This document shows, one piece after another, positions 105 through 62,519 of a stretch of DNA of 64,000 bases. Within the stretch, counting starts at the first letter, position 1. The number at the start of each line of letters is the position of its first letter. The DNA is taken from positions 1-64,000 of the IMG/VR virus record IMGVR_UViG_3300028131_000823; one strand, 5' to 3'. A program made the translations under genes and the position numbers. The notes below the pieces were generated by a model that was given only the letters and a program-made list of their open reading frames with translations, had not been told where the DNA came from and made no database searches.

Positions 105-193
105 TTGTTAATAACTTTTGAAAAAAAGCGGTCCAGGATTTTCACGGGTCGCTTTTTTTGTTTATATTAGTATTATAATTAAAACTTAAAAAA
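105..193 (+). promoter_or_regulatory. Conserved ~90 bp upstream element, copy 1 (putative early promoter)
   Basis: TGTTAATAACTTT...TTTTCACGGGTC-N11-TTATATTAGTATTATAATTAAAACTTAAA, also at 7224 and 62153, each directly before an ATG. Confidence 0.75.
121..159 (+). terminator. Intrinsic terminator-like hairpin after hsp20, overlapping the conserved element
   Basis: AAAAAAAGCGGTCC...GGGTCGCTTTTTTT inverted repeat with T7 tract. Confidence 0.55.
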
Positions 194-373
194 ATGACAA
201 TAGAAAAACAAGTACAAAAAAGCTGGAAAAACAAATCCGATTTAGATTGGGAATTATGTTGCACAATTAACTCAAAAAATCCATTAATTACATGGGGAGA
301 ATATTATGAACTAAATAAATTACATGTTGAATTTGAGATGGGTTGTGAGAATTTAGGTTATAAATTTGTATAA
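194..373 (+). CDS. Hypothetical protein (59 aa), below the ORF-track cutoff
   Basis: Translated by hand: MTIEKQVQKSWKNKSDLDWELCC...GYKFV*; directly follows the conserved element. Confidence 0.6.
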   Translation: MTIEKQVQKSWKNKSDLDWELCCTINSKNPLITWGEYYELNKLHVEFEMGCENLGYKFV

Positions 374-1963: not shown

Positions 1964-2779
1964 ATGAACTACTACAACGTATTAGGCGTAGATAAAGGGG
2001 CATCTGATTCTGAAATAAAGAAAGCATATCGTAAAAAAGCAAAGGAGTATCATCCTGATAAAAACGGCGACTCAGAAAAGTTTAAGGAAGTTAGTGAAGC
2101 TTATGATGTTTTAGGAGATAAAACTAAGAAGCAAAACTATGATCAATTTGGAGATCCTAAGGGAAGTCCATTTAGTGGAAGGAATCCCTTTGGAGGTAAT
2201 GGTGGAAATCCCTTTGGTGGCAGTGGAGACTTTGCAGATATGTTTAATGACATATTTGGAAATAGAAGACAGGCTAAAGGCCAAGACTTTAGAGTTAATA
2301 TGACTATTAGTTTTAATGAAGCCTTTCATGGTTGTCGTAAAGAATTTTCAGTAAATGGACAAAGGCTTGCTATGAATTTTAAACCTGGTATGTTTACTGG
2401 TCAAACATTTAGAATTAATGACAAAGGAGGCACTAACCCCTATAACCCTGATGGTCCTAGAGGGGATGTTATCATAAATGTATCTGTTATACAAGATTCT
2501 AGATTTGTGTTACAAGGAAGTGATATCTGGACTGAATTAACTCTCAACTGGTGGGACATAATGTTAGGTTGTAAAAGAGAAGTTGAAACACCTGATGGCA
2601 AAGTCTTACTTAAAATTCCAGAAAACACATATCCTGGCAGGGTACTGAGGATAGTTGACAAAGGTTTCCCGATATATAATACAACAAACAGAGGAAGTTT
2701 GCTTTGTAGAATTAATGGTAAATGGCCAAAACTTACAGAGGAACAACTTGAACATGTTAAAAAAATAAAAGTAAAATGA
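1964..2779 (+). CDS. dnaJ: DnaJ/CbpA-type co-chaperone (J domain + G/F region + C-terminal domain, no Zn finger)
   Basis: NYYNVLGV...[17 protein letters not shown] (HPD motif), AYDVLGD, G/F-rich linker, GDVII, C-terminal beta domain. Confidence 0.95.
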
Positions 2780-3039
2780 TAGGCGAAAGTCCACTTGGTG
2801 AATTTAATGATTTTGAAATGTTTCTAAATATGTTAGTAACTAAACCAATTAATCCTGGTCACGTCTATGAAATGATTTATGATGCTTTAATAAAAGATAC
2901 TTCATATGCAATATATGGAGGTTATCCAAAGGATTTAAAATTAAAAGCCTTAGATTCTTTAATTAATTGGTTTGAATTAACTGAAGAATTTGAAAAGTGT
3001 AAAGAAGTAAAAACTATAAAAGACAAGATATGCTCATAG
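2776..3039 (+). CDS. Hypothetical protein with C-terminal UVR-like (EEFEKC) motif
   Basis: [24 protein letters not shown]. Confidence 0.7.
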
Positions 3040-3221
3040 TAAATGTAAAGAAAGATATAGAAAAGGCGTTAAAGCAATATAAAAGAAAAGTGTTTAAAAC
3101 TAAACAATCTAAGAAAGTTAGTGCAAGAAGACACCATACTAAAAAATCAGTACTCCGTAGAGAGGAAGTCAAACATGCCCAATACGTTGAAAGAATGTAT
3201 GGGAATAAAAATAATGACTAA
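3030..3221 (+). CDS. rpsU: Ribosomal protein bS21 (Bacteroidota-type)
   Basis: [21 protein letters not shown]...RRHHTKKSVLRR...AQY matches the bS21 pattern IE-x-AL-K-x-YKRK...R-x-x-x-x-KxS-x-x-RR; 63 aa, basic. Confidence 0.85.
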   Translation: MLIVNVKKDIEKALKQYKRKVFKTKQSKKVSARRHHTKKSVLRREEVKHAQYVERMYGNKNND

Positions 3222-3297
3222 TAATATAATCTATTTTTTTTATTAAACAAGGCTGCCAATAAAAGGTGGTTGGAATATATAAATAAAAGTAAGTAAA

Positions 3298-3564
3298 ATG
3301 GCGATGGAAGGATATTTATCCAGTGAGGATCACGACAAATTAATGGAAGAGTCATATGAACTGTTAAGTAAAAACCATACTAAATCAGTTAATAGATTCA
3401 TTGTATATAAAGAAGGAAGCCAGAGTGTTGAGGTACCACATGGTATTGGTCAACGTTCTAAATACATTGACTTGCTTATTAAACACTTTGAAGAAAAAGA
3501 GGAATATGAGAAGTGTACAAATCTACAAGAACTTAAAGAGCTTGTTATTATGGCAGGTGACTAA
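3298..3564 (+). CDS. Hypothetical protein with C-terminal UVR-like (EEYEKC) motif
   Basis: LLIKHFEEKEEYEKCTNLQELKELV. Confidence 0.7.
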   Translation: MAMEGYLSSEDHDKLMEESYELLSKNHTKSVNRFIVYKEGSQSVEVPHGIGQRSKYIDLLIKHFEEKEEYEKCTNLQELKELVIMAGD

Positions 3565-3579
3565 AAAATACCACAATAG

Positions 3580-4272
3580 ATGCAAAAAAGACAAAATGGA
3601 AACTCGTTAAAAAAACACATTCAAGAGTCGCTAAAGCGAGTACAGCTTAGACAATCACAACAAGAATATGTAAGAACAGTTAATGAAAATCAAATTATAT
3701 TTTGTCACGGCCCTGCCGGAACCTCAAAAACCTTTACAGCATGTTATATTGGACTTAAAATGTTTAGTGAAAAACAAATTAAGAGACTTGTACTTTGTAG
3801 ACCAATGGTTGAAAGTAGCGAGAAACTTGGATTCTTACCAGGTGTATTAGAAGAAAAGATCTCACCATATTTAAAATCTTATAAATCTAATATTGAAAAA
3901 ATCATAGGTTCTGAAATGACTGAACTTATGTTTGAAAAGAATTTTATTACATTTGAACCACTTGCATATATGAGAGGAGATACCTATGATGATGCATTAA
4001 TGATTCTTGATGAGGCGCAAAATGCTGAAATGAAAAGCTTAATGCTATTTATAACAAGAATGGGTAAATCTAGTAAATCAATTGTAGCTGGTGATATTAA
4101 CCAATATGACATTCAAAAAAATAAAGTTAGTATGCCAAAGTTTTATGAAATAATTAAAACTACTAAAGGTGTCAATGAACATGTCTTCACAGAAAAAGAT
4201 ATTGTTAGAGCCAAGATTCTTATTGATATTGTTAAGAAGTATGATGCATGGCGAGATAACGAAGGCAGATAA
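3580..4272 (+). CDS. phoH: PhoH-family ATPase
   Basis: GPAGTSKT P-loop, RPMVES..LGFLPG, PLAYMRGDTY, ILDEAQN, GDINQYD. Confidence 0.95.
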   Translation: MQKRQNGNSLKKHIQESLKRVQLRQSQQEYVRTVNENQIIFCHGPAGTSKTFTACYIGLKMFSEKQIKRLVLCRPMVESSEKLGFLPGVLEEKISPYLKSYKSNIEKIIGSEMTELMFEKNFITFEPLAYMRGDTYDDALMILDEAQNAEMKSLMLFITRMGKSSKSIVAGDINQYDIQKNKVSMPKFYEIIKTTKGVNEHVFTEKDIVRAKILIDIVKKYDAWRDNEGR

Positions 4273-4297
4273 ACATTTTTCATTTTCTTCATATAAT
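4271..4297 (+). promoter_or_regulatory. AAAC-N16-ATATAAT promoter-like motif (class 2)
   Basis: AAAC 4271-4274, ATATAAT 4291-4297; same spacing at 6014, 8892, 11414, 47813, 47966, 63843. Confidence 0.6.
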
Positions 4298-4302
4298 AAC
4301 AT

Positions 4303-4935
4303 ATGAATAAAGCAAAACACATTATTTTAAAATCTTACATGAACAAAGAACTTGTTGAGGTAGGATTAGATGAAGCGGGAAGAGGAGCATTGGCTGGACC
4401 AGTTGTGGTTGCAGGTGTTATAATGCCAAAAGGATTTACACATCCATTAATTAAAGATTCTAAATTATTAAACGAAGGTCAAAGACGAGAGGCAAGGGCA
4501 TTGGTGTTAGATAATGCAATTTCATATTCAATTAAAGCAGTTGATGTAGATTATATTGAAAAAACAAATATTTTAAAAGCTACATTATTTGGAATGAAAG
4601 AATGTTTAGATGGAATTAAAATAAAAGGAGATCAATTTGATTTTATTCTTGTAGATGGAGATCAATTTCATGGATGGAACGGGCTTCCATTCGAAACAGT
4701 AGTCGGCGGTGATAATAAATACACATCAATTGCTGCAGCTTCTATACTTGCAAAAACAAGTAGAGATTTAATTATGAAAAAATTAAACGAAGGCCATGAA
4801 CAATATGGTTGGAATTCCAATAAAGGTTATGGAACAAGTGCACATCGAAATGCAATTAAACAGGATGGAGCAACTGAACATCATAGAATGAGTTTTATAA
4901 GTCACATGCTAACCTCAACCTCGAGTTTGTTTTGA
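4303..4935 (+). CDS. rnhB: Ribonuclease HII (start may be ATG 4339)
   Basis: GLDEAGRGALAGPVVVAGV, IKDSKLL, LVDG, GGDNKYTSIAAASILAK, KGYGT, HR-x-SF. Confidence 0.95.
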   Translation: MNKAKHIILKSYMNKELVEVGLDEAGRGALAGPVVVAGVIMPKGFTHPLIKDSKLLNEGQRREARALVLDNAISYSIKAVDVDYIEKTNILKATLFGMKECLDGIKIKGDQFDFILVDGDQFHGWNGLPFETVVGGDNKYTSIAAASILAKTSRDLIMKKLNEGHEQYGWNSNKGYGTSAHRNAIKQDGATEHHRMSFISHMLTSTSSLF

Positions 4936-5509: not shown

Positions 5510-5830
5510 ATGCATCCAATAGATTTAAATTACGTTAGTCATGAAACTAGACACATTGATGAAATGGAAATTAGAGTAAATGAACTAAAAGAAGATAAAA
5601 AGAAATATGTAAAGAATCTTGAAGTAAGATTTAGAAAAAACTGTTCTTTAGAAGAAGCACAACGTAGATTAAAAGATCATCTCGATAGAAATCCAAAGGG
5701 ATTGGAAATGAAAAAACTCAAATCAATGGATTCTACTTTACATCATGTTATTAAGCAATTAGATATTAGAAAAGAAAAACTGGAAAAATTCTGTAATGAG
5801 AGAACGATTGAAGGAGAAAGTAATTCTTAA
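5510..5830 (+). CDS. Hypothetical coiled-coil protein
   Basis: 106 aa ORF. Confidence 0.65.
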   Translation: MHPIDLNYVSHETRHIDEMEIRVNELKEDKKKYVKNLEVRFRKNCSLEEAQRRLKDHLDRNPKGLEMKKLKSMDSTLHHVIKQLDIRKEKLEKFCNERTIEGESNS

Positions 5831-6029
5831 TGACCTTTTAAATGAGTTACAGTTCGTAAGAAGAGTAATTCAAAGTTGTAAAACAGGGCACCAATTAGAA
5901 ATTGCGATTGATTGGATGAATCGCTGGAAACATAGTCGTAAAAAATGGATCGAATCTAAAAGGATGCCATATTTATTAAAAGAGTTTGAAAGTATTGAAT
6001 TCTTTAAAGAAATAAACAATTTGCAATAA
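5796..6029 (+). CDS. Hypothetical protein
   Basis: 77 aa ORF. Confidence 0.55.
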   Translation: MRERLKEKVILNDLLNELQFVRRVIQSCKTGHQLEIAIDWMNRWKHSRKKWIESKRMPYLLKEFESIEFFKEINNLQ

Positions 6030-6040
6030 TTTCATATAAA
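6014..6040 (+). promoter_or_regulatory. AAAC-N16-ATATAAA promoter-like motif (class 2)
   Basis: Same spacing as other class-2 sites; 5 nt before ATG 6046. Confidence 0.5.
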
Positions 6041-6045
6041 ATTAA

Positions 6046-6270
6046 ATGTTACAAGCAATCTCAATATATTTACTAATCGGAATCTTAATTAACTTATTAG
6101 TAGATTTAATGTATGATTGGATTGGTAGGAGTAACATTGACACTAAATTAATAGACACTAACATGAGTAATGAAAAATGGGATAACTTTACAAAGGTAGT
6201 AGTTACTTTATTATGGCCAATATGTATTGTTTATGTGATAATTCAAATTTTTAACGAATATACAAAATGA
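6046..6270 (+). CDS. Two-TM membrane protein
   Basis: Two hydrophobic helices (IYLLIGILINLLV; VVVTLLWPICIVYVII). Confidence 0.65.
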   Translation: MLQAISIYLLIGILINLLVDLMYDWIGRSNIDTKLIDTNMSNEKWDNFTKVVVTLLWPICIVYVIIQIFNEYTK

Positions 6271-7217
6271 CAAATTACGGATATTGTTGTATCAACAAAA
6301 CACTTGCCGAACAAGATATTAAAGTCGGCAGAAAAATGATTAAAAAAACCTTTACTGAAAGAGGTATTGAATATGCAGGTCAACTTGCACTCTTAAATGT
6401 AAGTGATATGTGTAAGATTATTAAATGGAATAATGAAAATGGCATTAAACTTTATCGTATGTCTTCAAGTATGTTTCCATGGTCCACTGAATATGATTTA
6501 AAAGATCTTCCTACATATAATAGAATTAAAGTATTATTACAAGGCGCAGGTCACATGGCTATTGAAGGTGGTCAAAGACTTACATTCCATCCTGGTCATT
6601 TTTGTGTATTGGCTAGCATGACTCCTAGGGTAGTATCTTCTGCGATACATGAATTAAATCAACATGGCGAAATCATGGACCTCATGGGTCTCCCAAGAAA
6701 TCCTAACGCACCTATCAATATACATGTCAATACAACAATGGGTGGCAAGAAAGAAAGTATGGAAAGGTTCTGTAAAATATTTAAAACACTAGATGAAAGC
6801 GTAAGATGTAGACTTGTTGTAGAAAATGATGACAAGAAAGCACAATACAGTGTAAAAGATTTGAAAGAAGGAATTTCAGATGTGATTGGATGTCCAGTTA
6901 TGTTTGATTATCACCATCATTGGTGTTATGAAGATCCAATGCCAGTCAAAGAAGCATTTGAACTTGCAAGATCAACATGGCCAGTAGGAACTAAACAATG
7001 TACACACTACAGTTCATGTAAACAAATACATGAAGATAGTTCAGTTATGAATAGAGCACATGCTGATTATATTTATGAAACTATTCCAACATTTGGTTAT
7101 GATGTAGACGTGGAATTAGAAGCTAAGGCTAAAGAACTTGCATTAATTAAATACTTAGAAGATTTAGCCCATAAAAAATTTTATGAGACTAATACTGGTC
7201 AAACCATGGTTGTTTAA
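6267..7217 (+). CDS. uvsE: UV-damage endonuclease UvsE/UVDE
   Basis: GYCCIN, KLYRMSSSMFPW, RLTFHPGHF-x-VLAS, INIHV, LVVENDDK, PVMFDYHHH, H-A-DYI, ELEAKAKELA. Confidence 0.93.
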   Translation: MTNYGYCCINKTLAEQDIKVGRKMIKKTFTERGIEYAGQLALLNVSDMCKIIKWNNENGIKLYRMSSSMFPWSTEYDLKDLPTYNRIKVLLQGAGHMAIEGGQRLTFHPGHFCVLASMTPRVVSSAIHELNQHGEIMDLMGLPRNPNAPINIHVNTTMGGKKESMERFCKIFKTLDESVRCRLVVENDDKKAQYSVKDLKEGISDVIGCPVMFDYHHHWCYEDPMPVKEAFELARSTWPVGTKQCTHYSSCKQIHEDSSVMNRAHADYIYETIPTFGYDVDVELEAKAKELALIKYLEDLAHKKFYETNTGQTMVV

Positions 7218-7223
7218 TTAAAA

Positions 7224-7314
7224 TTGTTAATAACTTTTGAAAAAAAGTGTTAAAAAGTTTTCACGGGTCAAAGATTATAGTTATATTAGTATTATAATTA
7301 AAACTTAAAAAAAC
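7224..7314 (+). promoter_or_regulatory. Conserved ~90 bp upstream element, copy 2 (putative early promoter)
   Basis: 52 bp (7258-7309) identical to 62188-62239. Confidence 0.8.
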
Positions 7315-7956
7315 ATGAAAAAAATAGCAATAACAATATTTACATTATTTACACTATCAACAACTGCACAGGATATTTGTAATGCACTAAACATAACTTA
7401 CACCCAATTTGGGACAAACTCTTTTAGATTATATTCAAATCTAGATAGTGTTAACATGTCGGGGGCTACTTCATTTAGATGGAAAGCATTTCCTGATAGT
7501 GTATTCGCACAATTAGATACTGCTAATTATAATTTTAAAACATGGTTAGATAGTACTAATATGAGCTGGGAGAGTGGGGATTCTGTGCCTTTTATACATT
7601 TTCTTTACCATAATACTAATCATAGAAAAAAATATGGAGTATTTTTATTTTCTTTTTTAAGAGATGGAGATACATGTGTTATTCCATTTACAATGAGTAG
7701 AACTAATAGTCCAATTACTTGGCATATGAATCAAATACCTTCATTTAATACTACAGTAGTTACTCCACCTAGTACTGGGAATCCAAATGGCAATACTACT
7801 GGAATTGAAGATTATACTAATACTAATAAAAAATTAGTTGCAGTGTATAATTTAATGGGACAAATTGTAAATCCTGATGAGGTTAACAATCAAGTTTTAA
7901 TATATCTATATGATGATAGAAGTATTGAAAAGAAGTACAAACAAACAATGTTCTAG
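7315..7956 (+). CDS. Secreted protein with signal peptide and T9SS-sorting-like C-terminal domain
   Basis: MKKIAITIFTLFTLSTTAQ signal peptide (AQ cleavage, Bacteroidota-style); S/T/P/G linker; TTGIED...KKLVAVYNLMGQ...LIYLYDDRSIEKKY tail. Confidence 0.7.
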   Translation: MKKIAITIFTLFTLSTTAQDICNALNITYTQFGTNSFRLYSNLDSVNMSGATSFRWKAFPDSVFAQLDTANYNFKTWLDSTNMSWESGDSVPFIHFLYHNTNHRKKYGVFLFSFLRDGDTCVIPFTMSRTNSPITWHMNQIPSFNTTVVTPPSTGNPNGNTTGIEDYTNTNKKLVAVYNLMGQIVNPDEVNNQVLIYLYDDRSIEKKYKQTMF

Positions 7957-7980
7957 ATATATTTAAATATTTAAACAAAA

Positions 7981-8004
7981 AAGGTGGCCTAGGCTGCCTT
8001 TTTT
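7981..8004 (+). terminator. Intrinsic terminator
   Basis: AAGGTGGC-CTAG-GCTGCCTT followed by TTTT, right after the 7956 stop. Confidence 0.7.
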
Positions 8005-8065
8005 ATTTTCAAAAATATTAATATATTATAATGATATATAACTAATAACAAAAAAATACTTTAAA

Positions 8066-8689
8066 ATGAATACTAATCAAATATTATCATTCGAAGAGTT
8101 TTCAACAAGAGGTACAGATACTGCCACTGCTGAAGCTCCAACAACAGATACTGCCACTGTAGATACTGATACTACTGTTACAGATACTGAAACAACAGAC
8201 ACTGACTCTGAAGAAACAACTGACTCTGAAGAAACAGAAGAAGAAACTACTGATACTGAAGAAACAGAAGAAGAGCCAGTTCACACACACACTCACTCAG
8301 CTGCTGAATCTGTTCAAGTAAATGAAGAAGAAGAAACACATACGACAACAGTTGCTGAAATGTACAAGAATATTAAAGAAGCTTGTAAAAATGAAGCAAT
8401 GGCATATGAAGCTGATGATTATGCAGAACATACAAAAGACACATACATGACTGAAATGGCTACACTTGCTGCTGAAACTGCATGTAATGTTATTCAAGAA
8501 ATGTATGAAAAAGAAGATTGTACAAAAGAACAATATGAAGCTGCATGTAATTCTATAAAAGAAGCTTATGCTAAAAAATGTAACGAAGCATGTGAAGCAT
8601 ATGGTACTTCTGAGAATGAAAGACCTGAATCTGAGAACGAACCAGTTCAAGGTCCAGAAAATTCAATCATTACTAAAACAGAAGCTTAA
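8066..8689 (+). CDS. Highly acidic (E/T/D-rich) protein with CTS-like N-terminus
   Basis: MNTNQILSFEEFS; low-complexity TDTE/EETT repeats; GATATATAA at 8033. Confidence 0.7.
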   Translation: MNTNQILSFEEFSTRGTDTATAEAPTTDTATVDTDTTVTDTETTDTDSEETTDSEETEEETTDTEETEEEPVHTHTHSAAESVQVNEEEETHTTTVAEMYKNIKEACKNEAMAYEADDYAEHTKDTYMTEMATLAAETACNVIQEMYEKEDCTKEQYEAACNSIKEAYAKKCNEACEAYGTSENERPESENEPVQGPENSIITKTEA

Positions 8690-8871
8690 TGAATAAGATA
8701 AAAGAAATCGTTAATGCGTCTTGGTTTAAAGCCGCAATTGCAGGAGGAATAGCAACCCTATTACTATTCCAAGGAGATAAATTCTACGCTGGCATTGCTT
8801 ACGGTATTGCCATTAGAGAATTCTTATTAGGACTTAAAGTTGAAGGCGGGACTCAACAACTTAATTCTTAA
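8689..8871 (+). CDS. Small two-TM membrane protein
   Basis: FKAAIAGGIATLLLF and FYAGIAYGIAIREFLLG hydrophobic segments. Confidence 0.6.
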   Translation: MNKIKEIVNASWFKAAIAGGIATLLLFQGDKFYAGIAYGIAIREFLLGLKVEGGTQQLNS

Positions 8872-8902
8872 TAAATTTATTAACAATTTAAAAACTTTAA
8901 TC

Positions 8903-8936
8903 AAGCCATCTATATAATAATAAAGATGGCTTTTTT
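8903..8936 (+). terminator. Intrinsic terminator whose loop holds a promoter -10-like box
   Basis: AAGCCATCT/AGATGGCTT perfect 9 bp stem plus T tract; ATATAAT (8912-8918) in the loop, AAAC at 8892. Confidence 0.65.
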
Positions 8937-8954
8937 AATACAAACTAAACAGAC

Positions 8955-9389
8955 ATGCCAAAGACACCAATAGAATATACATATATGCAAGTTGCTTATC
9001 AATTTGCTAAATTAAGCTATGCTGAAAGAAGGCAAGTTGGATGTATTCTCGTTAAGAATGAACAAGTAATAAGTTTTGGCTATAATGGAACGCCAAGAGG
9101 ATTTAATAACACTTGTGAATTAGATAACACTACTAAACCTGAAGTGTTACATGCAGAATCTAATGCTATTACTAAAGTTGCCCAATCTACGATGGGGAGT
9201 GGCGGGGCGGAACTCTACACTACAACAGCCCCCTGTTTTAGTTGTTCAAAAATAATTATTCAATCTGGTATATCAAGAGTATATTATTCAGAAACATATA
9301 GGGATATGTCAGGTATAGAACTATTAGAACAAGCCAATATAGAAGTAATAAGAATAGAACCAATACACATGAATGGATCAAGTAAATAA
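8955..9389 (+). CDS. dCMP deaminase (ComEB/T4 cd family)
   Basis: RRQVGCILVK, GYNGTP, HAESNAI, PCFSC zinc motifs. Confidence 0.92.
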   Translation: MPKTPIEYTYMQVAYQFAKLSYAERRQVGCILVKNEQVISFGYNGTPRGFNNTCELDNTTKPEVLHAESNAITKVAQSTMGSGGAELYTTTAPCFSCSKIIIQSGISRVYYSETYRDMSGIELLEQANIEVIRIEPIHMNGSSK

Positions 9390-11193
9390 GATTATAGAAC
9401 AAGCCTTACAAGAAAAAACTTTTGGTAAAGACTTTAAGTTTAGACAATATCAACGTGAAACAATCACAGCAATCGTTAATCAATATATAGAAGACCCTGA
9501 GTCTACAATTGTTATAGATGCTCCAACAGGTACTGGTAAATCAATTATTGCAATGTGGTCCTCATACATCCTTAAAGAACTTGGCAATCAAGGCTACATA
9601 GTAACATCGGATAAAACACTACAAGAACAATACGAATATGACTTCTCACAGTATAATACAGGATGGCCCTCAATTCAAGGCATTGACAACTACAACTGTG
9701 AAGTGAATGGCCTGCCGTTTAGCCTAGGTGAATGTAAGATGAGAGGCTACTCTTATGGCCAAGCCGAAAGACTACAATGCGCCAGAATGTGCGACTATTT
9801 AAACACTCGTAAAAAGGCGATCGATGCGCCAGTTACCCTTGTAAATTATAGTTTCTGGTTAATACAACAAAATTATGTTAATTATAGAATGGCTGTAAGA
9901 CAAATGGAGAAAGAAGGACATAATACCCTTATTAATGATATGTCCTCGGAACGATATGATGAAATACTAGAGTCATATGATAATTTTTTTCCTTTTAAGA
10001 AACGGGACTTTGTTTTCTTTGATGAGGCGCACAAGATAGATGAAATTGTTCAACAACATTTTTCTCCTTCTTTGAAAAAATTTTCCCTATTTAAAACGGG
10101 CGCTTTGATTGACTTCATGATGGCTGAAGGAGTTAGAGTCCCAGCAGTTTCTAAAAGTTTTATAGGAGATCTAATGGATGAAATTCTAATAGAAGAAAAT
10201 AAGGAAAAACTTCTCATTAAACTAGCAAAAGTAAAGGGGTTTTTATGGAGCATTTTAAAAGGTAGAGCAGAATTAAATCAGCGAGCAAAACAAAAGTTTG
10301 GAATTGATGTAAATTCAAGTCTTCCAAAGAAATGGCAACGGGCATTTTCACAGCTTGACGGGCTTAAAGATACTCATTGTAAAATTGAAGACTATTTAGA
10401 AATTATAGAAACTACAGGCATTGAGTCTATGGTTTTTAATCAAAACCTACATGATGGTGAAATTAAATTAATGTGTTTGAGTGAGGCACATCTAATTAAA
10501 AAGCATTTACACAAAAGAGCAGGCTTTAAAGTATTTATGTCAGCAACTATCGGAGAACCTAAAACTTATATGAAAGTAATGGGAATAGACAATGCTAAAT
10601 TTATCAGACTATCTAATGGATTTACATATGAGAAGTCTCCAATTGTATTTGTTGATAGATGGAAGATGTCAATGCAACATAAACATAAAAGTTTACCGGA
10701 AGCTATTAAGATGTTAGATCAAATTTTAGAGAAACATAAAGGGCACAGAGGACTTATTCACACAGGAAGTTATGAATTTAGTCAATATATTAAAGGACAC
10801 ACCTCGAACATTAGAAGGATTATTGAGTATAATAAGAGTAGCGAAAAGAAAGAAGCATTGGTTAAATTTAAGAATACAATGAATGGAGTTATTATGGGTC
10901 CATCAATTCTTGAAGGTTTAGATTTTAAAGATGACACTTGTAGGTTTCAAATATTTTTTAAAGTACCCTATCCTTCATTAGGAGATCCATTAACAAGTGC
11001 TAAAATAAAGAAATCACCAGGTTGGTATGATTGGAAAACTGGAATAACAATCCAACAAGGTGCAGGTAGAAGTATTAGAAACAAAGAAGATTGGGCAGTT
11101 ACATATATCTTAGATGCCTGCTTTGGAAATCTGATAAATAAACTAGAATACTTTCCAGATAATTTTAAACAAAGAATTAAGACAATAAAATGA
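9373..11193 (+). CDS. DinG/XPD-like SF2 helicase with putative Fe-S cysteines
   Basis: FRQYQ Q-motif, DAPTGTGKS, four Cys (CEV/CKM/CARMCDY), FDEAH, FMSAT, EGLDF, KVPYP, QGAGRSIR. Confidence 0.9.
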   Translation: MDQVNKIIEQALQEKTFGKDFKFRQYQRETITAIVNQYIEDPESTIVIDAPTGTGKSIIAMWSSYILKELGNQGYIVTSDKTLQEQYEYDFSQYNTGWPSIQGIDNYNCEVNGLPFSLGECKMRGYSYGQAERLQCARMCDYLNTRKKAIDAPVTLVNYSFWLIQQNYVNYRMAVRQMEKEGHNTLINDMSSERYDEILESYDNFFPFKKRDFVFFDEAHKIDEIVQQHFSPSLKKFSLFKTGALIDFMMAEGVRVPAVSKSFIGDLMDEILIEENKEKLLIKLAKVKGFLWSILKGRAELNQRAKQKFGIDVNSSLPKKWQRAFSQLDGLKDTHCKIEDYLEIIETTGIESMVFNQNLHDGEIKLMCLSEAHLIKKHLHKRAGFKVFMSATIGEPKTYMKVMGIDNAKFIRLSNGFTYEKSPIVFVDRWKMSMQHKHKSLPEAIKMLDQILEKHKGHRGLIHTGSYEFSQYIKGHTSNIRRIIEYNKSSEKKEALVKFKNTMNGVIMGPSILEGLDFKDDTCRFQIFFKVPYPSLGDPLTSAKIKKSPGWYDWKTGITIQQGAGRSIRNKEDWAVTYILDACFGNLINKLEYFPDNFKQRIKTIK

Positions 11194-62120: not shown

Positions 62121-62154
62121 AAAACCCAAGTTCTCGCAGATCTTGGGTTTTTTT
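62121..62154 (+). terminator. Intrinsic terminator
   Basis: AAAACCCAAG/CTTGGGTTTT 10 bp stem plus T tract. Confidence 0.8.
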
Positions 62155-62243
62155 GTTAATAACTTTAGTAAAAAAGTTGCCTCAAAATTTTCACGGGTCA
62201 AAGATTATAGTTATATTAGTATTATAATTAAAACTTAAACTAG
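62153..62243 (+). promoter_or_regulatory. Conserved ~90 bp upstream element, copy 3 (putative early promoter)
   Basis: 52 bp identical to copy 2. Confidence 0.8.
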
Positions 62244-62519
62244 ATGAGCTATACAAATTTTAACAGACATGAATCAATGAATTCAGAAACTAGAAAAGAA
62301 ATCATGAACTTAATTAATGATTTAATAAATTACGATGAACAAATAGATAAAAAATTAAGAAGATCTATTGAAAACAAATTATATGGTTTATTTGATGGTT
62401 ATTTATATGATAAACTTCAATTGAATGCATTAGAATGTCCAAGTGATTTAGCAAGTAGAATTATGAAAATATATCATAAATGTGCAATGTACCCAAAGTC
62501 AAAAACAATTATATTTTAA
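62244..62519 (+). CDS. Hypothetical protein (putative early gene)
   Basis: 91 aa directly behind conserved element copy 3. Confidence 0.7.
   Translation: MSYTNFNRHESMNSETRKEIMNLINDLINYDEQIDKKLRRSIENKLYGLFDGYLYDKLQLNALECPSDLASRIMKIYHKCAMYPKSKTIIF

What the first reader, a model, noticed from the sequence alone, without database searches (positions are those of the whole stretch)
7224..8004. Phage early gene that looks like cargo for the host type IX secretion system
Seen: a self-contained unit made of the conserved upstream element, the ORF and a terminator. The ORF encodes a Sec signal peptide ending AQ, a globular domain, an S/T/P/G linker and a C-terminal TTGIED...KKLVAVYNLMGQ...LIYLYDDRSIEKKY. 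Known: T9SS type-A CTDs of Bacteroidota contain a Y/D-x-x-G-(Q/R) motif, a downstream Y-x-Y segment and terminal K-x-x-K, and signal peptides ending before Gln are typical of Bacteroidota. Inference: the phage hijacks T9SS to display or secrete a protein early in infection, for example for superinfection exclusion, receptor masking or jamming of gliding/T9SS. Caveat: the visible CTD (about 50 aa) is shorter than the canonical domain.
Basis: partly seen in the sequence, partly recalled or inferred. Interest (0 to 1): 0.8.

Follow-up and report, generated by a model that had tools for sequence, protein, structure and literature searches.

The report
Phage gene with short secretion tail
A marine phage of Flavobacteria-like hosts carries a stand-alone gene for an exported protein whose short C-terminal tail looks like a cut-down, so far unmodelled version of the Bacteroidota type IX secretion tag, a tag class also found on over a hundred proteins of marine Bacteroidota.

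Summary
ORF 7315-7956 (213 aa) sits between a ~90-nt element present three times in the window and a strong terminator hairpin; metatranscriptome contigs fit a separate transcript. The protein has a Bacteroidota-style signal peptide (TTA|Q), a fast-diverging beta-rich domain with two invariant cysteines, a disordered linker and a near-invariant ~50-aa beta tail. The tail is not a certified type A CTD: TIGR04183 scores 16.1 bits against a cutoff of 23, PF18962 gives nothing, and hhalign probability is 35-48%. It does behave like a sorting tag. It lies 0-5 residues from the stop in 103/103 cases in 80 genome loci, nearly all Bacteroidota. About 95% of carriers have signal peptides, passengers are diverse, and the genes sit beside canonical T9SS cargo. 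It keeps the two motifs shown experimentally to matter in type A CTDs (beta3-beta4 Gly, C-terminal Lys). The passenger domain has chromosomal homologues in marine bacteria, and a second phage lineage carries another short-tail protein. Best reading: a host-derived moron encoding probable T9SS cargo with a reduced 'mini-CTD'. Phage-encoded T9SS cargo is already published, so the new element is the short tail class. Early timing and any superinfection-exclusion role remain untested.

The parts
7224..7313 (+). Conserved promoter-like element. Three invariant blocks (7224-7247, 7258-7269, 7281-7313) are separated by variable spacers of fixed length, and the element ends at the ATG.
   Evidence: Three copies in the window. 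Conserved in L001 and L005. No RNA-structure support. Promoter function is inferred.
7315..7368 (+). Signal peptide, residues 1-18 (MKK + hydrophobic core + TTA), with predicted cleavage before Gln19.
   Evidence: Sequence; conserved in homologues. Fits the -3/-1 rule and the Bacteroidetes Q-rule (PMC5837995). 87/88 short-tail carriers show [AGSTC]Q at this position.
7369..7746 (+). Passenger domain, residues 19-144: beta-rich, with invariant C22, W85 and C121. A local divergence hotspot.
   Evidence: Alignments. AF2 strands, with only weak FN3/Ig-like fold hits. dN 0.15-0.21 against 0.006-0.067 in neighbouring genes. Chromosomal homologues in the P0010 and P0008 clusters.
7747..7794 (+). S/T/P/G/N-rich linker, residues ~145-160.
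   Evidence: pLDDT ~35 over residues 151-170; indels among homologues.
7795..7953 (+). Short C-terminal tail ('mini-CTD'), residues 161-213: KKLVAVYNLMGQIV hairpin, VLIYLYDD strand and IEKKYK terminal strand. G182, Y199 and D201 are invariant; K206 is >=90% conserved.
   Evidence: Sub-threshold likeness to type A CTD. dN 0.015-0.046.
7977..8004 (+). Intrinsic terminator hairpin followed by a T-run.
   Evidence: Fold -14.9 kcal/mol, z -2.5. The RNA contig of run X16 ends at 7983, and no listed RNA piece in four runs covers ~7984-8059.
105..194 (+). Copy 1 of the promoter-like element, ahead of the leftmost small-ORF block (ATG at 194).
62153..62243 (+). Copy 3 of the promoter-like element, ahead of ORF 62244-62519.

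Best explanation
The region is an insulated promoter-gene-terminator cassette (a 'moron') in the nucleotide-metabolism module of an uncultured marine myovirus-type phage of Flavobacteriales-like hosts. Its product is exported by Sec and cut by signal peptidase I before Gln19. It consists of a small disulfide-containing beta-rich passenger domain derived from a host chromosomal family, a flexible linker and a ~50-residue beta tail. The tail belongs to a large short-tail family that current type A/B models do not capture and that marks secreted proteins of marine Bacteroidota. It is most probably a reduced type-A-like T9SS sorting domain that keeps the beta3-beta4 Gly hairpin and the terminal Lys strand but lacks the PNP strands and about one middle strand. 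The infected cell's T9SS would then carry the protein across the outer membrane, to be released or surface-attached. Shown: gene, cassette, family, position, taxonomy, selection pattern, presence in RNA libraries. Inferred: Sec cleavage site, T9SS dependence, promoter function, timing, and any benefit to the phage.
For: Cassette. RNA contig 7284-7983, an uncovered intergenic gap, then new deeper contigs from 8060. Phage identity and Flavobacteriia affinity. Tail is modular and terminal: profile hits at the C-termini of unrelated proteins; 103/103 tails end 0-5 aa from the stop. Signal-peptide coupling: 94-96% against 38-40% background and 81-87% for canonical CTD ORFs. Taxonomy: 94 confirmed loci, nearly all Bacteroidota plus one Kapabacteria MAG. 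Adjacency to PF18962 cargo. 25 loci hold both tail types. Four sub-threshold signals point to type A CTD at the same residues: TIGR04183 E 0.0083; top PDB hit 8glj_D, a T9SS CTD, E 0.37; hhalign P 1.8e-4 and 4e-4; a canonical-CTD HMM built from bacterial loci ranks this ORF first of 396 window fragments, E 1e-3. Invariant G182 and conserved K206 match the Gly and Lys shown to matter for secretion (PMC11285876, PMC10994853). Purifying selection on the tail. AF2 gives an all-beta tail at pLDDT 70-78. Host homologues of the passenger.
Against: Curated thresholds are not met: TIGR04183 16.1 bits against 23; PF18962 no hit on the query and 1/24 family members at E 0.042; TIGR04183 3/24. hhalign probabilities are only 35-48% and cover just 19-32 columns. 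Known CTDs are 7-stranded sandwiches, whereas this tail has room for about 4 strands (PMC10994853). Foldseek found no CTD match with the whole model. A few tail-bearing gene calls lack a signal peptide (P0014, P0030). No experiment exists and the hosts are uncultured. The RNA evidence comes from assembled contigs in RNA libraries, which can contain DNA.
Confidence: 0.6

Rival explanations
1. The tail is a C-terminal module unrelated to T9SS targeting, for example a small surface-, glycan- or partner-binding or oligomerisation domain, or the tag of an unknown sorting route. The phage protein would then stay in the periplasm or act after lysis.
For: Family HMMs do not reach threshold. Only a 19-32-column hairpin aligns to canonical CTDs. 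The tail is too short for the 7-stranded CTD fold (PMC10994853).
Against: Strict placement 0-5 residues from the stop in 103/103 cases. ~95% signal-peptide coupling. Restriction to T9SS-bearing lineages. Adjacency to PF18962 genes. Conservation of exactly the Gly and Lys positions important in CTDs (PMC11285876). A binding domain has no need to be terminal.
Confidence: 0.22
2. It is an ordinary full member of the type A CTD family (TIGR04183/PF18962), and is merely divergent.
For: TIGR04183 is the only NCBIfam hit. The best PDB hit is a type A CTD. The local sequence NPNGNTTGIED resembles the PNP..f.IE start of canonical CTDs.
Against: The score is below the curated cutoff and the match covers only profile positions 4-42 of 72. 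About 10-12 residues between the hairpin and the last two strands are missing in all ~130 tails. The PNP motif is not conserved across the short-tail family. The same genomes hold canonical CTDs that form a separate HMM class.
Confidence: 0.08
3. The gene is a recently captured host gene with no role in infection (neutral cargo), or a mis-binned piece of bacterial DNA.
For: Chromosomal homologues exist. No function could be assigned to the passenger.
Against: It is syntenic in at least four related phage contigs from different samples. It has a phage-type promoter element shared with two other phage loci. The signal peptide and tail are under purifying selection. It is present in RNA libraries. 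A second phage lineage independently carries a short-tail protein. Its GC content (0.29) is close to the window's (0.30).
Confidence: 0.1

Closest known systems
T9SS type A C-terminal sorting domain (TIGR04183 / PF18962 Por_Secre_tail)
   Same: Extreme C-terminal position on Sec-exported proteins of Bacteroidota with diverse passengers. Beta structure. A hairpin with a conserved Gly ([FY][DN]xxG[RQK]) and a conserved Lys in the last strand. Encoded next to canonical cargo.
   Different: About 50 instead of 70-100 residues. About four predicted strands instead of seven. No conserved PNP strand, and ~10-12 residues missing before the last two strands. Below the curated HMM cutoffs. T9SS dependence untested.
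Phage-encoded T9SS cargo: 'Cryophage' (Bellas et al. 2020, PMC7468147) and crAss-like cluster 2 phages (de Jonge et al. 2019, PMC6949934)
   Same: Phages of Bacteroidota carrying genes for proteins with T9SS sorting domains. In Cryophage the cargo genes are hypervariable between variants, like the passenger domain here.
   Different: Those proteins carry canonical type A domains recognised by standard annotation and known enzyme, PA14 or BACON passengers. Here the tail is a short unmodelled variant, the passenger is a small domain of unknown function, and the gene is an insulated cassette.
Phage morons (independent promoter-gene-terminator units in phage genomes; from general knowledge of lambdoid phages)
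   Same: Own promoter-like element, a single ORF, own terminator, set between conserved phage genes, with cellular homologues.
   Different: The promoter element is a phage-wide repeat (three copies) rather than a host-type promoter brought in with the gene. No related genome lacking the cassette was found.
T9SS type B CTD (TIGR04131 / PF13585) with PorP/SprF-like partners (PMC9143113)
   Same: An alternative C-terminal T9SS signal class on Bacteroidota surface proteins.
   Different: No HMM hit even at E<=10. No PorP/SprF-like family was listed for the genes next to the tail-bearing genes in the contexts examined.

Membership tests
T9SS type A CTD (TIGR04183 / PF18962) | Scores at or above the curated cutoff of the family HMM | tested here: not met
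   TIGR04183 16.1 bits against cutoff 23, E 0.0083, profile positions 4-42 of 72. PF18962 no hit. Among 24 tail-bearing proteins, 3 hit TIGR04183 (best E 0.0057) and 1 hits PF18962 (E 0.042).
T9SS type A CTD (TIGR04183 / PF18962) | Domain lies at the extreme C-terminus of the protein | tested here: met
   The tail ends 3 residues before the stop in the query. 103/103 genomic tails end 0-5 residues before the stop.
T9SS type A CTD (TIGR04183 / PF18962) | N-terminal Sec signal peptide on the same protein | tested here: met
   MKK + hydrophobic core + TTA|Q. 94-96% of carriers are SP-like against 38-40% background. This is a heuristic only; SignalP was not available.
T9SS type A CTD (TIGR04183 / PF18962) | Seven-stranded Ig-like beta-sandwich of ~70-100 residues | tested here: not met
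   The tail is ~50 residues. AF2 (pLDDT 70-78) gives strands 174-178, 193-199 and 204-209 plus a short bridge. About 10 residues are missing relative to 8glj_D. Model confidence is moderate.
T9SS type A CTD (TIGR04183 / PF18962) | Conserved Gly at the beta3-beta4 loop and conserved Lys in the last strand (functionally validated motifs, PMC11285876, PMC10994853) | tested here: met
   G182 is invariant and K206 is >=90% conserved in 24- and 57-sequence alignments. The hairpin aligns to the canonical I.i.D..Gk.v block.
T9SS type A CTD (TIGR04183 / PF18962) | Restricted to lineages that have a T9SS | tested here: met
   94 confirmed loci, nearly all Flavobacteriales or other Bacteroidota plus one Kapabacteria MAG. 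Three contigs in two MAGs labelled otherwise are probably binning errors. Canonical CTD ORFs are present in 25 of the same loci. T9SS core genes were not surveyed genome-wide.
T9SS type A CTD (TIGR04183 / PF18962) | Secretion depends on the T9SS and the CTD is removed or processed | not testable with these tools
   Needs genetics and proteomics in a cultured carrier.
T9SS type B CTD (TIGR04131 / PF13585) | Family HMM match | tested here: not met
   No hit at E<=10 for the query or for the 24 family members.
Phage moron | Own promoter, single ORF, own terminator, transcribed separately from its neighbours | tested here: inconclusive
   Element and terminator are present. The RNA contig ends in the terminator and a new contig starts at 8060. 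However, a contig also runs from uvdE into the element, the 5' contig end falls in a repeat, and promoter activity is not shown.
Phage early gene | Transcribed in the first phase of infection | not testable with these tools
   Only indirect evidence: an element shared with the leftmost small-ORF block, and the position among DnaJ, PhoH, RNase HII, UvdE, dCMP deaminase and helicase genes.

The most novel reading that the evidence does not exclude
The ~50-residue tail defines a third, minimal class of T9SS sorting signal ('mini-CTD', about four strands that keep only the Gly hairpin and the Lys strand). It would be used by hundreds of secreted proteins of uncultured marine Flavobacteriales that current annotation misses, and at least two phage lineages would have captured it to place fast-evolving small proteins on or outside the infected cell.
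Probability: 0.4. Interest if true: 0.7.

Novelty: new variant of a known kind. Interest (0 to 1): 0.5.

Why it matters
If the short tail is a working T9SS signal, three things follow. First, it lowers the known minimal requirement for recognition by the translocon from a seven-stranded sandwich to about four strands, which matters for mechanism and for engineering surface display. Second, the secretomes of abundant marine Flavobacteriales (Crocinitomicaceae, Cryomorphaceae and relatives) are under-predicted, because these proteins are annotated as 'hypothetical'. Third, marine phages repeatedly pick up such cargo and keep the targeting parts constant while the passenger diverges, which points to a role at the cell surface during infection. 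If it is not a T9SS signal, it is still a widespread unannotated C-terminal module tightly linked to secretion.

Tried and rejected
- Megablast and tblastn against isolated phages: no match for the region or the protein.
- PHROGs, Pfam and PDB sequence search with the whole family: nothing useful.
- First AF2 run with 8 close homologues: pLDDT 49, unusable.
- Foldseek with the better model: only weak FN3/Ig-like hits in PDB and weak viral hits, so no function for the passenger.
- P0013, P0024 and P0025 from the profile search are tandem-repeat translations with summed spurious scores; rejected.
- The P0020 phage cluster was first aligned as a full-length homologue, but a tail-less HMM shows that only the signal peptide and tail are shared.
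- Two genome scans with broad alignments failed for lack of a conserved stretch; a 5-sequence tail alignment worked.
- RNA structure in the upstream element: none.
- Lipoprotein reading: no lipobox before C22, and C22 and C121 are co-invariant, so more likely a disulfide (inference).
- Exosortase or sortase-type tags: the tail has no hydrophobic helix or basic end (sequence).
- Positive selection on the passenger: omega 0.18-0.43 with raised dS, so not shown.

Full report
**1. What is there**

The window is a phage genome segment. All ORFs over 90 aa are on the + strand. It encodes a baseplate wedge subunit, helicases and phage-only families. A neighbouring protein has distant relatives only in phages of Tenacibaculum, Chryseobacterium and Flavobacterium and in uncultured huge phages. 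No tRNA gene is present, and no isolated phage is similar at the DNA level.

The finding's ORF is 7315-7956, 213 aa. It lies between uvdE (6267-7217) and an acidic-protein gene, followed by dCMP deaminase and a helicase. The same order occurs in four related metagenomic contigs, one of them 86.6 kb long.

**2. The cassette**

The ~90-nt element before the ATG occurs three times in the window: 105-194, 7224-7313 and 62153-62243. Each copy ends directly at a start codon, and none is expected by chance. The element has three invariant blocks separated by variable spacers of fixed length. It is conserved at the same place in L001 and L005 and has no RNA-structure signal. A DNA-level promoter or regulator site is therefore the likeliest role, but this is inferred.

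Downstream, 7977-8004 forms a strong hairpin followed by a T-run (-14.9 kcal/mol, z -2.5).

Six seawater metatranscriptome runs hold the region. When four were laid on 5800-9700:
- Run X16 gives a perfect 700-nt contig spanning 7284-7983. Its 3' end is inside the terminator. Its 5' end is in the repeated element, where assemblies break, so it is not a reliable start site.
- None of the listed pieces from the four runs covers ~7984-8059.
- Much deeper contigs (depth 38-89, against 5-14 over the gene) begin at 8060-8067 in three runs, just before the next ATG at 8066.

This fits separate transcripts rather than contaminating DNA. These are assembled contigs from RNA libraries, though, so the result is only consistent with transcription. 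Infection timing cannot be read from these data.

**3. The protein**

- **Signal peptide (residues 1-18):** MKK, a hydrophobic core, then TTA. Gln19 follows, matching the -3/-1 rule and the Bacteroidetes Q-rule (PMC5837995).
- **Passenger (residues 19-144):** beta-rich, with C22, W85 and C121 invariant even in distant homologues.
- **Linker (residues ~145-160):** S/T/P/G/N-rich, with indels among homologues and pLDDT ~35.
- **Tail (residues 161-213):** almost invariant among the seven close homologues.

Codon analysis shows this is protein-level constraint. Tail dN is 0.015-0.046 with synonymous changes present. The passenger is the most divergent stretch of the neighbourhood (dN 0.15-0.21, against 0.006-0.067 in flanking genes), with raised dS and omega 0.18-0.43. 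That describes a variable island, not proven positive selection.

With a 57-sequence alignment, AF2 gives an all-beta tail at pLDDT 70-78 and a beta-rich passenger. Fold searches give only weak FN3/Ig-like matches, so the passenger has no assigned function.

**4. Is the tail a T9SS CTD? Formal tests**

Pfam gives nothing. NCBIfam gives TIGR04183 as the only hit, but at 16.1 bits against a cutoff of 23 (E 0.0083), covering only profile positions 4-42 of 72. By its defining HMMs the tail is not a member.

A profile of the family searched against 1.84 billion representatives found 27 proteins. Apart from the protein's own cluster, one full-length homologue and three tandem-repeat artefacts, these match mainly or only profile positions ~155-208, at their own C-terminal ends. 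They carry varied passengers such as LRR and PKD domains. Of 24 such proteins, only 3 touch TIGR04183 and 1 touches PF18962, all below threshold. The tail is therefore a distinct short family (alignment A5).

Four independent weak signals point to type A CTDs at the same residues:
- The best of 177,635 PDB sequences is the 75-aa T9SS CTD 8glj_D. It matches in two colinear blocks, with ~10 residues missing in our tail (E 0.37).
- hhalign against canonical CTDs taken from the same bacterial contigs gives P 1.8e-4 over 32 columns.
- With 128 short tails against 33 canonical CTDs, hhalign gives P 4e-4 over 19 columns.
- An HMM of six canonical CTDs ranks this ORF first among 396 six-frame fragments of the window (E 1e-3).

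The protein-language-model neighbours of the tail mostly fall in cluster sets where some members carry PF18962. This is a lead only. No other ORF of the window carries either kind of tail.

**5. Behaviour of the tail family**

A motif scan of one genome per species found 94 confirmed loci. Nearly all are uncultured marine Flavobacteriales (Crocinitomicaceae, Cryomorphaceae, Weeksellaceae) or other Bacteroidota, plus one Kapabacteria MAG. Three contigs in MAGs labelled Thalassomonas or Bdellovibrionales are probably mis-binned.

In the 80 loci kept:
- All 103 tails end 0-5 residues before the stop codon.
- Carrier proteins are 50-1102 aa long.
- 94-96% have a signal-peptide-like start, against 81-87% of canonical-CTD ORFs and 38-40% of other ORFs.
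- 87 of 88 have a small residue followed by Gln at the cleavage position.
- 25 loci hold both short and canonical tails.

On a 155-kb bacterial contig a short-tail gene is the fourth in a row after three PF18962 genes.

The two positions that experiments have shown to matter in type A CTDs are conserved here. These are the Gly at the beta3-beta4 turn and the Lys in the last strand that contacts PorV (PMC11285876, PMC10994853). Here G182 is invariant and K206 is >=90% conserved.

Together this is what a secretion tag looks like, and T9SS is the only known Bacteroidota pathway that uses a beta-type C-terminal tag. Dependence on T9SS remains an inference.

**6. Origin**

With the tail removed, the passenger still matches the chromosomal P0010 cluster (E ~1e-7 over profile positions 1-125) and part of the P0008 cluster. 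P0046, of the P0010 cluster, lies among housekeeping genes directly after a 996-aa trypsin-PKD protein with PF18962, on at least 24 marine contigs. P0040, of the P0008 cluster, lies on a 356-kb bacterial contig with PF18962 genes. Named relatives of the short-tail family come from a Crocinitomicaceae MAG and a Flavobacteriales bacterium, and are annotated 'hypothetical'.

A different phage lineage (DNA ligase, RecA-like gene, DUF932) carries another protein that shares only the signal peptide and the tail. Phages have therefore acquired short-tail cargo at least twice.

**7. Comparison and novelty**

Phage-encoded T9SS cargo is already published: three variable cargo genes in 'Cryophage' (PMC7468147) and sorting-domain proteins in crAss-like phages (PMC6949934). 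The concept is known.

Two things appear new. One is the short tail class itself, which is unmodelled, widespread in marine Bacteroidota and retains only the two functional motifs. The other is its presence on an insulated phage cassette with a host-derived, fast-diverging passenger.

I rate this a new variant of a known kind, of moderate interest. The proposed roles (superinfection exclusion, receptor masking, jamming of gliding) are untested. The constant targeting parts combined with a variable passenger fit a surface-interface role but do not identify it.

Noticed in passing
window 8066-8689: The next gene encodes a very acidic T/D/E-rich repeat protein (pI 4.05; 56 D+E against 12 K+R). 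It has its own transcript start near 8060 and the highest RNA-contig depth of the stretch (38-89). It might be a DNA-mimic or anti-restriction-like early protein. It has no Pfam hit.
   Followed up: partly
window 1964-4935: Auxiliary genes upstream: DnaJ-like (1964-2779), a ribosomal protein S21 homologue (3030-3218), PhoH (3580-4272) and RNase HII (4303-4935), followed by UvdE (6267-7217). They were identified by 95-98% identity to L001 genes carrying those Pfam hits.
   Followed up: partly
window 105-194 and 62153-62243: Two further copies of the promoter-like element head other small-ORF blocks. Loose ends of RNA contigs at 7238-7313 show still other sequences on either side of the element, so the phage population has more copies or variants than the three in the window.
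   Followed up: partly
L092 4355-4963; L093 8001-8609: A second, unrelated phage lineage (56-64 kb contigs with DNA ligase, RecA-like gene, DUF932 and T5orf172) encodes a 202-aa protein (P0075) with a Bacteroidota-type signal peptide, a different passenger and the same short tail.
   Followed up: partly
P0014 and P0030 (metagenomic proteins): Two gene calls join a cytoplasmic enzyme fragment (UvrC N-terminus; homocysteine S-methyltransferase N-terminus) to the short tail, without a signal peptide. They are probably deletion remnants or mis-called genes, but this is unexplained.
   Followed up: no
window 6295-6708: RNA contigs of runs X16 and X18 show a joint that skips 412 nt inside uvdE. The support is weak (23 letters on the shorter side). 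It may be a strain variant with a different uvdE segment.
   Followed up: no
L016, L037, L054: Short-tail genes occur on contigs of MAGs labelled Thalassomonas (Gammaproteobacteria) and Bdellovibrionales. The contigs are short (2.6-12.9 kb), and L016 and L037 carry signal peptides ending ...AQ. Binning contamination is likelier than real occurrence outside Bacteroidota.
   Followed up: no
BFVD hits A0A7S9STJ6 and A0A7S9XDT1 (Virus NIOZ-UU157): Two proteins of this marine virus match the model over ~50 columns at 26-29% identity. They may be further viral carriers of the short tail.
   Followed up: no
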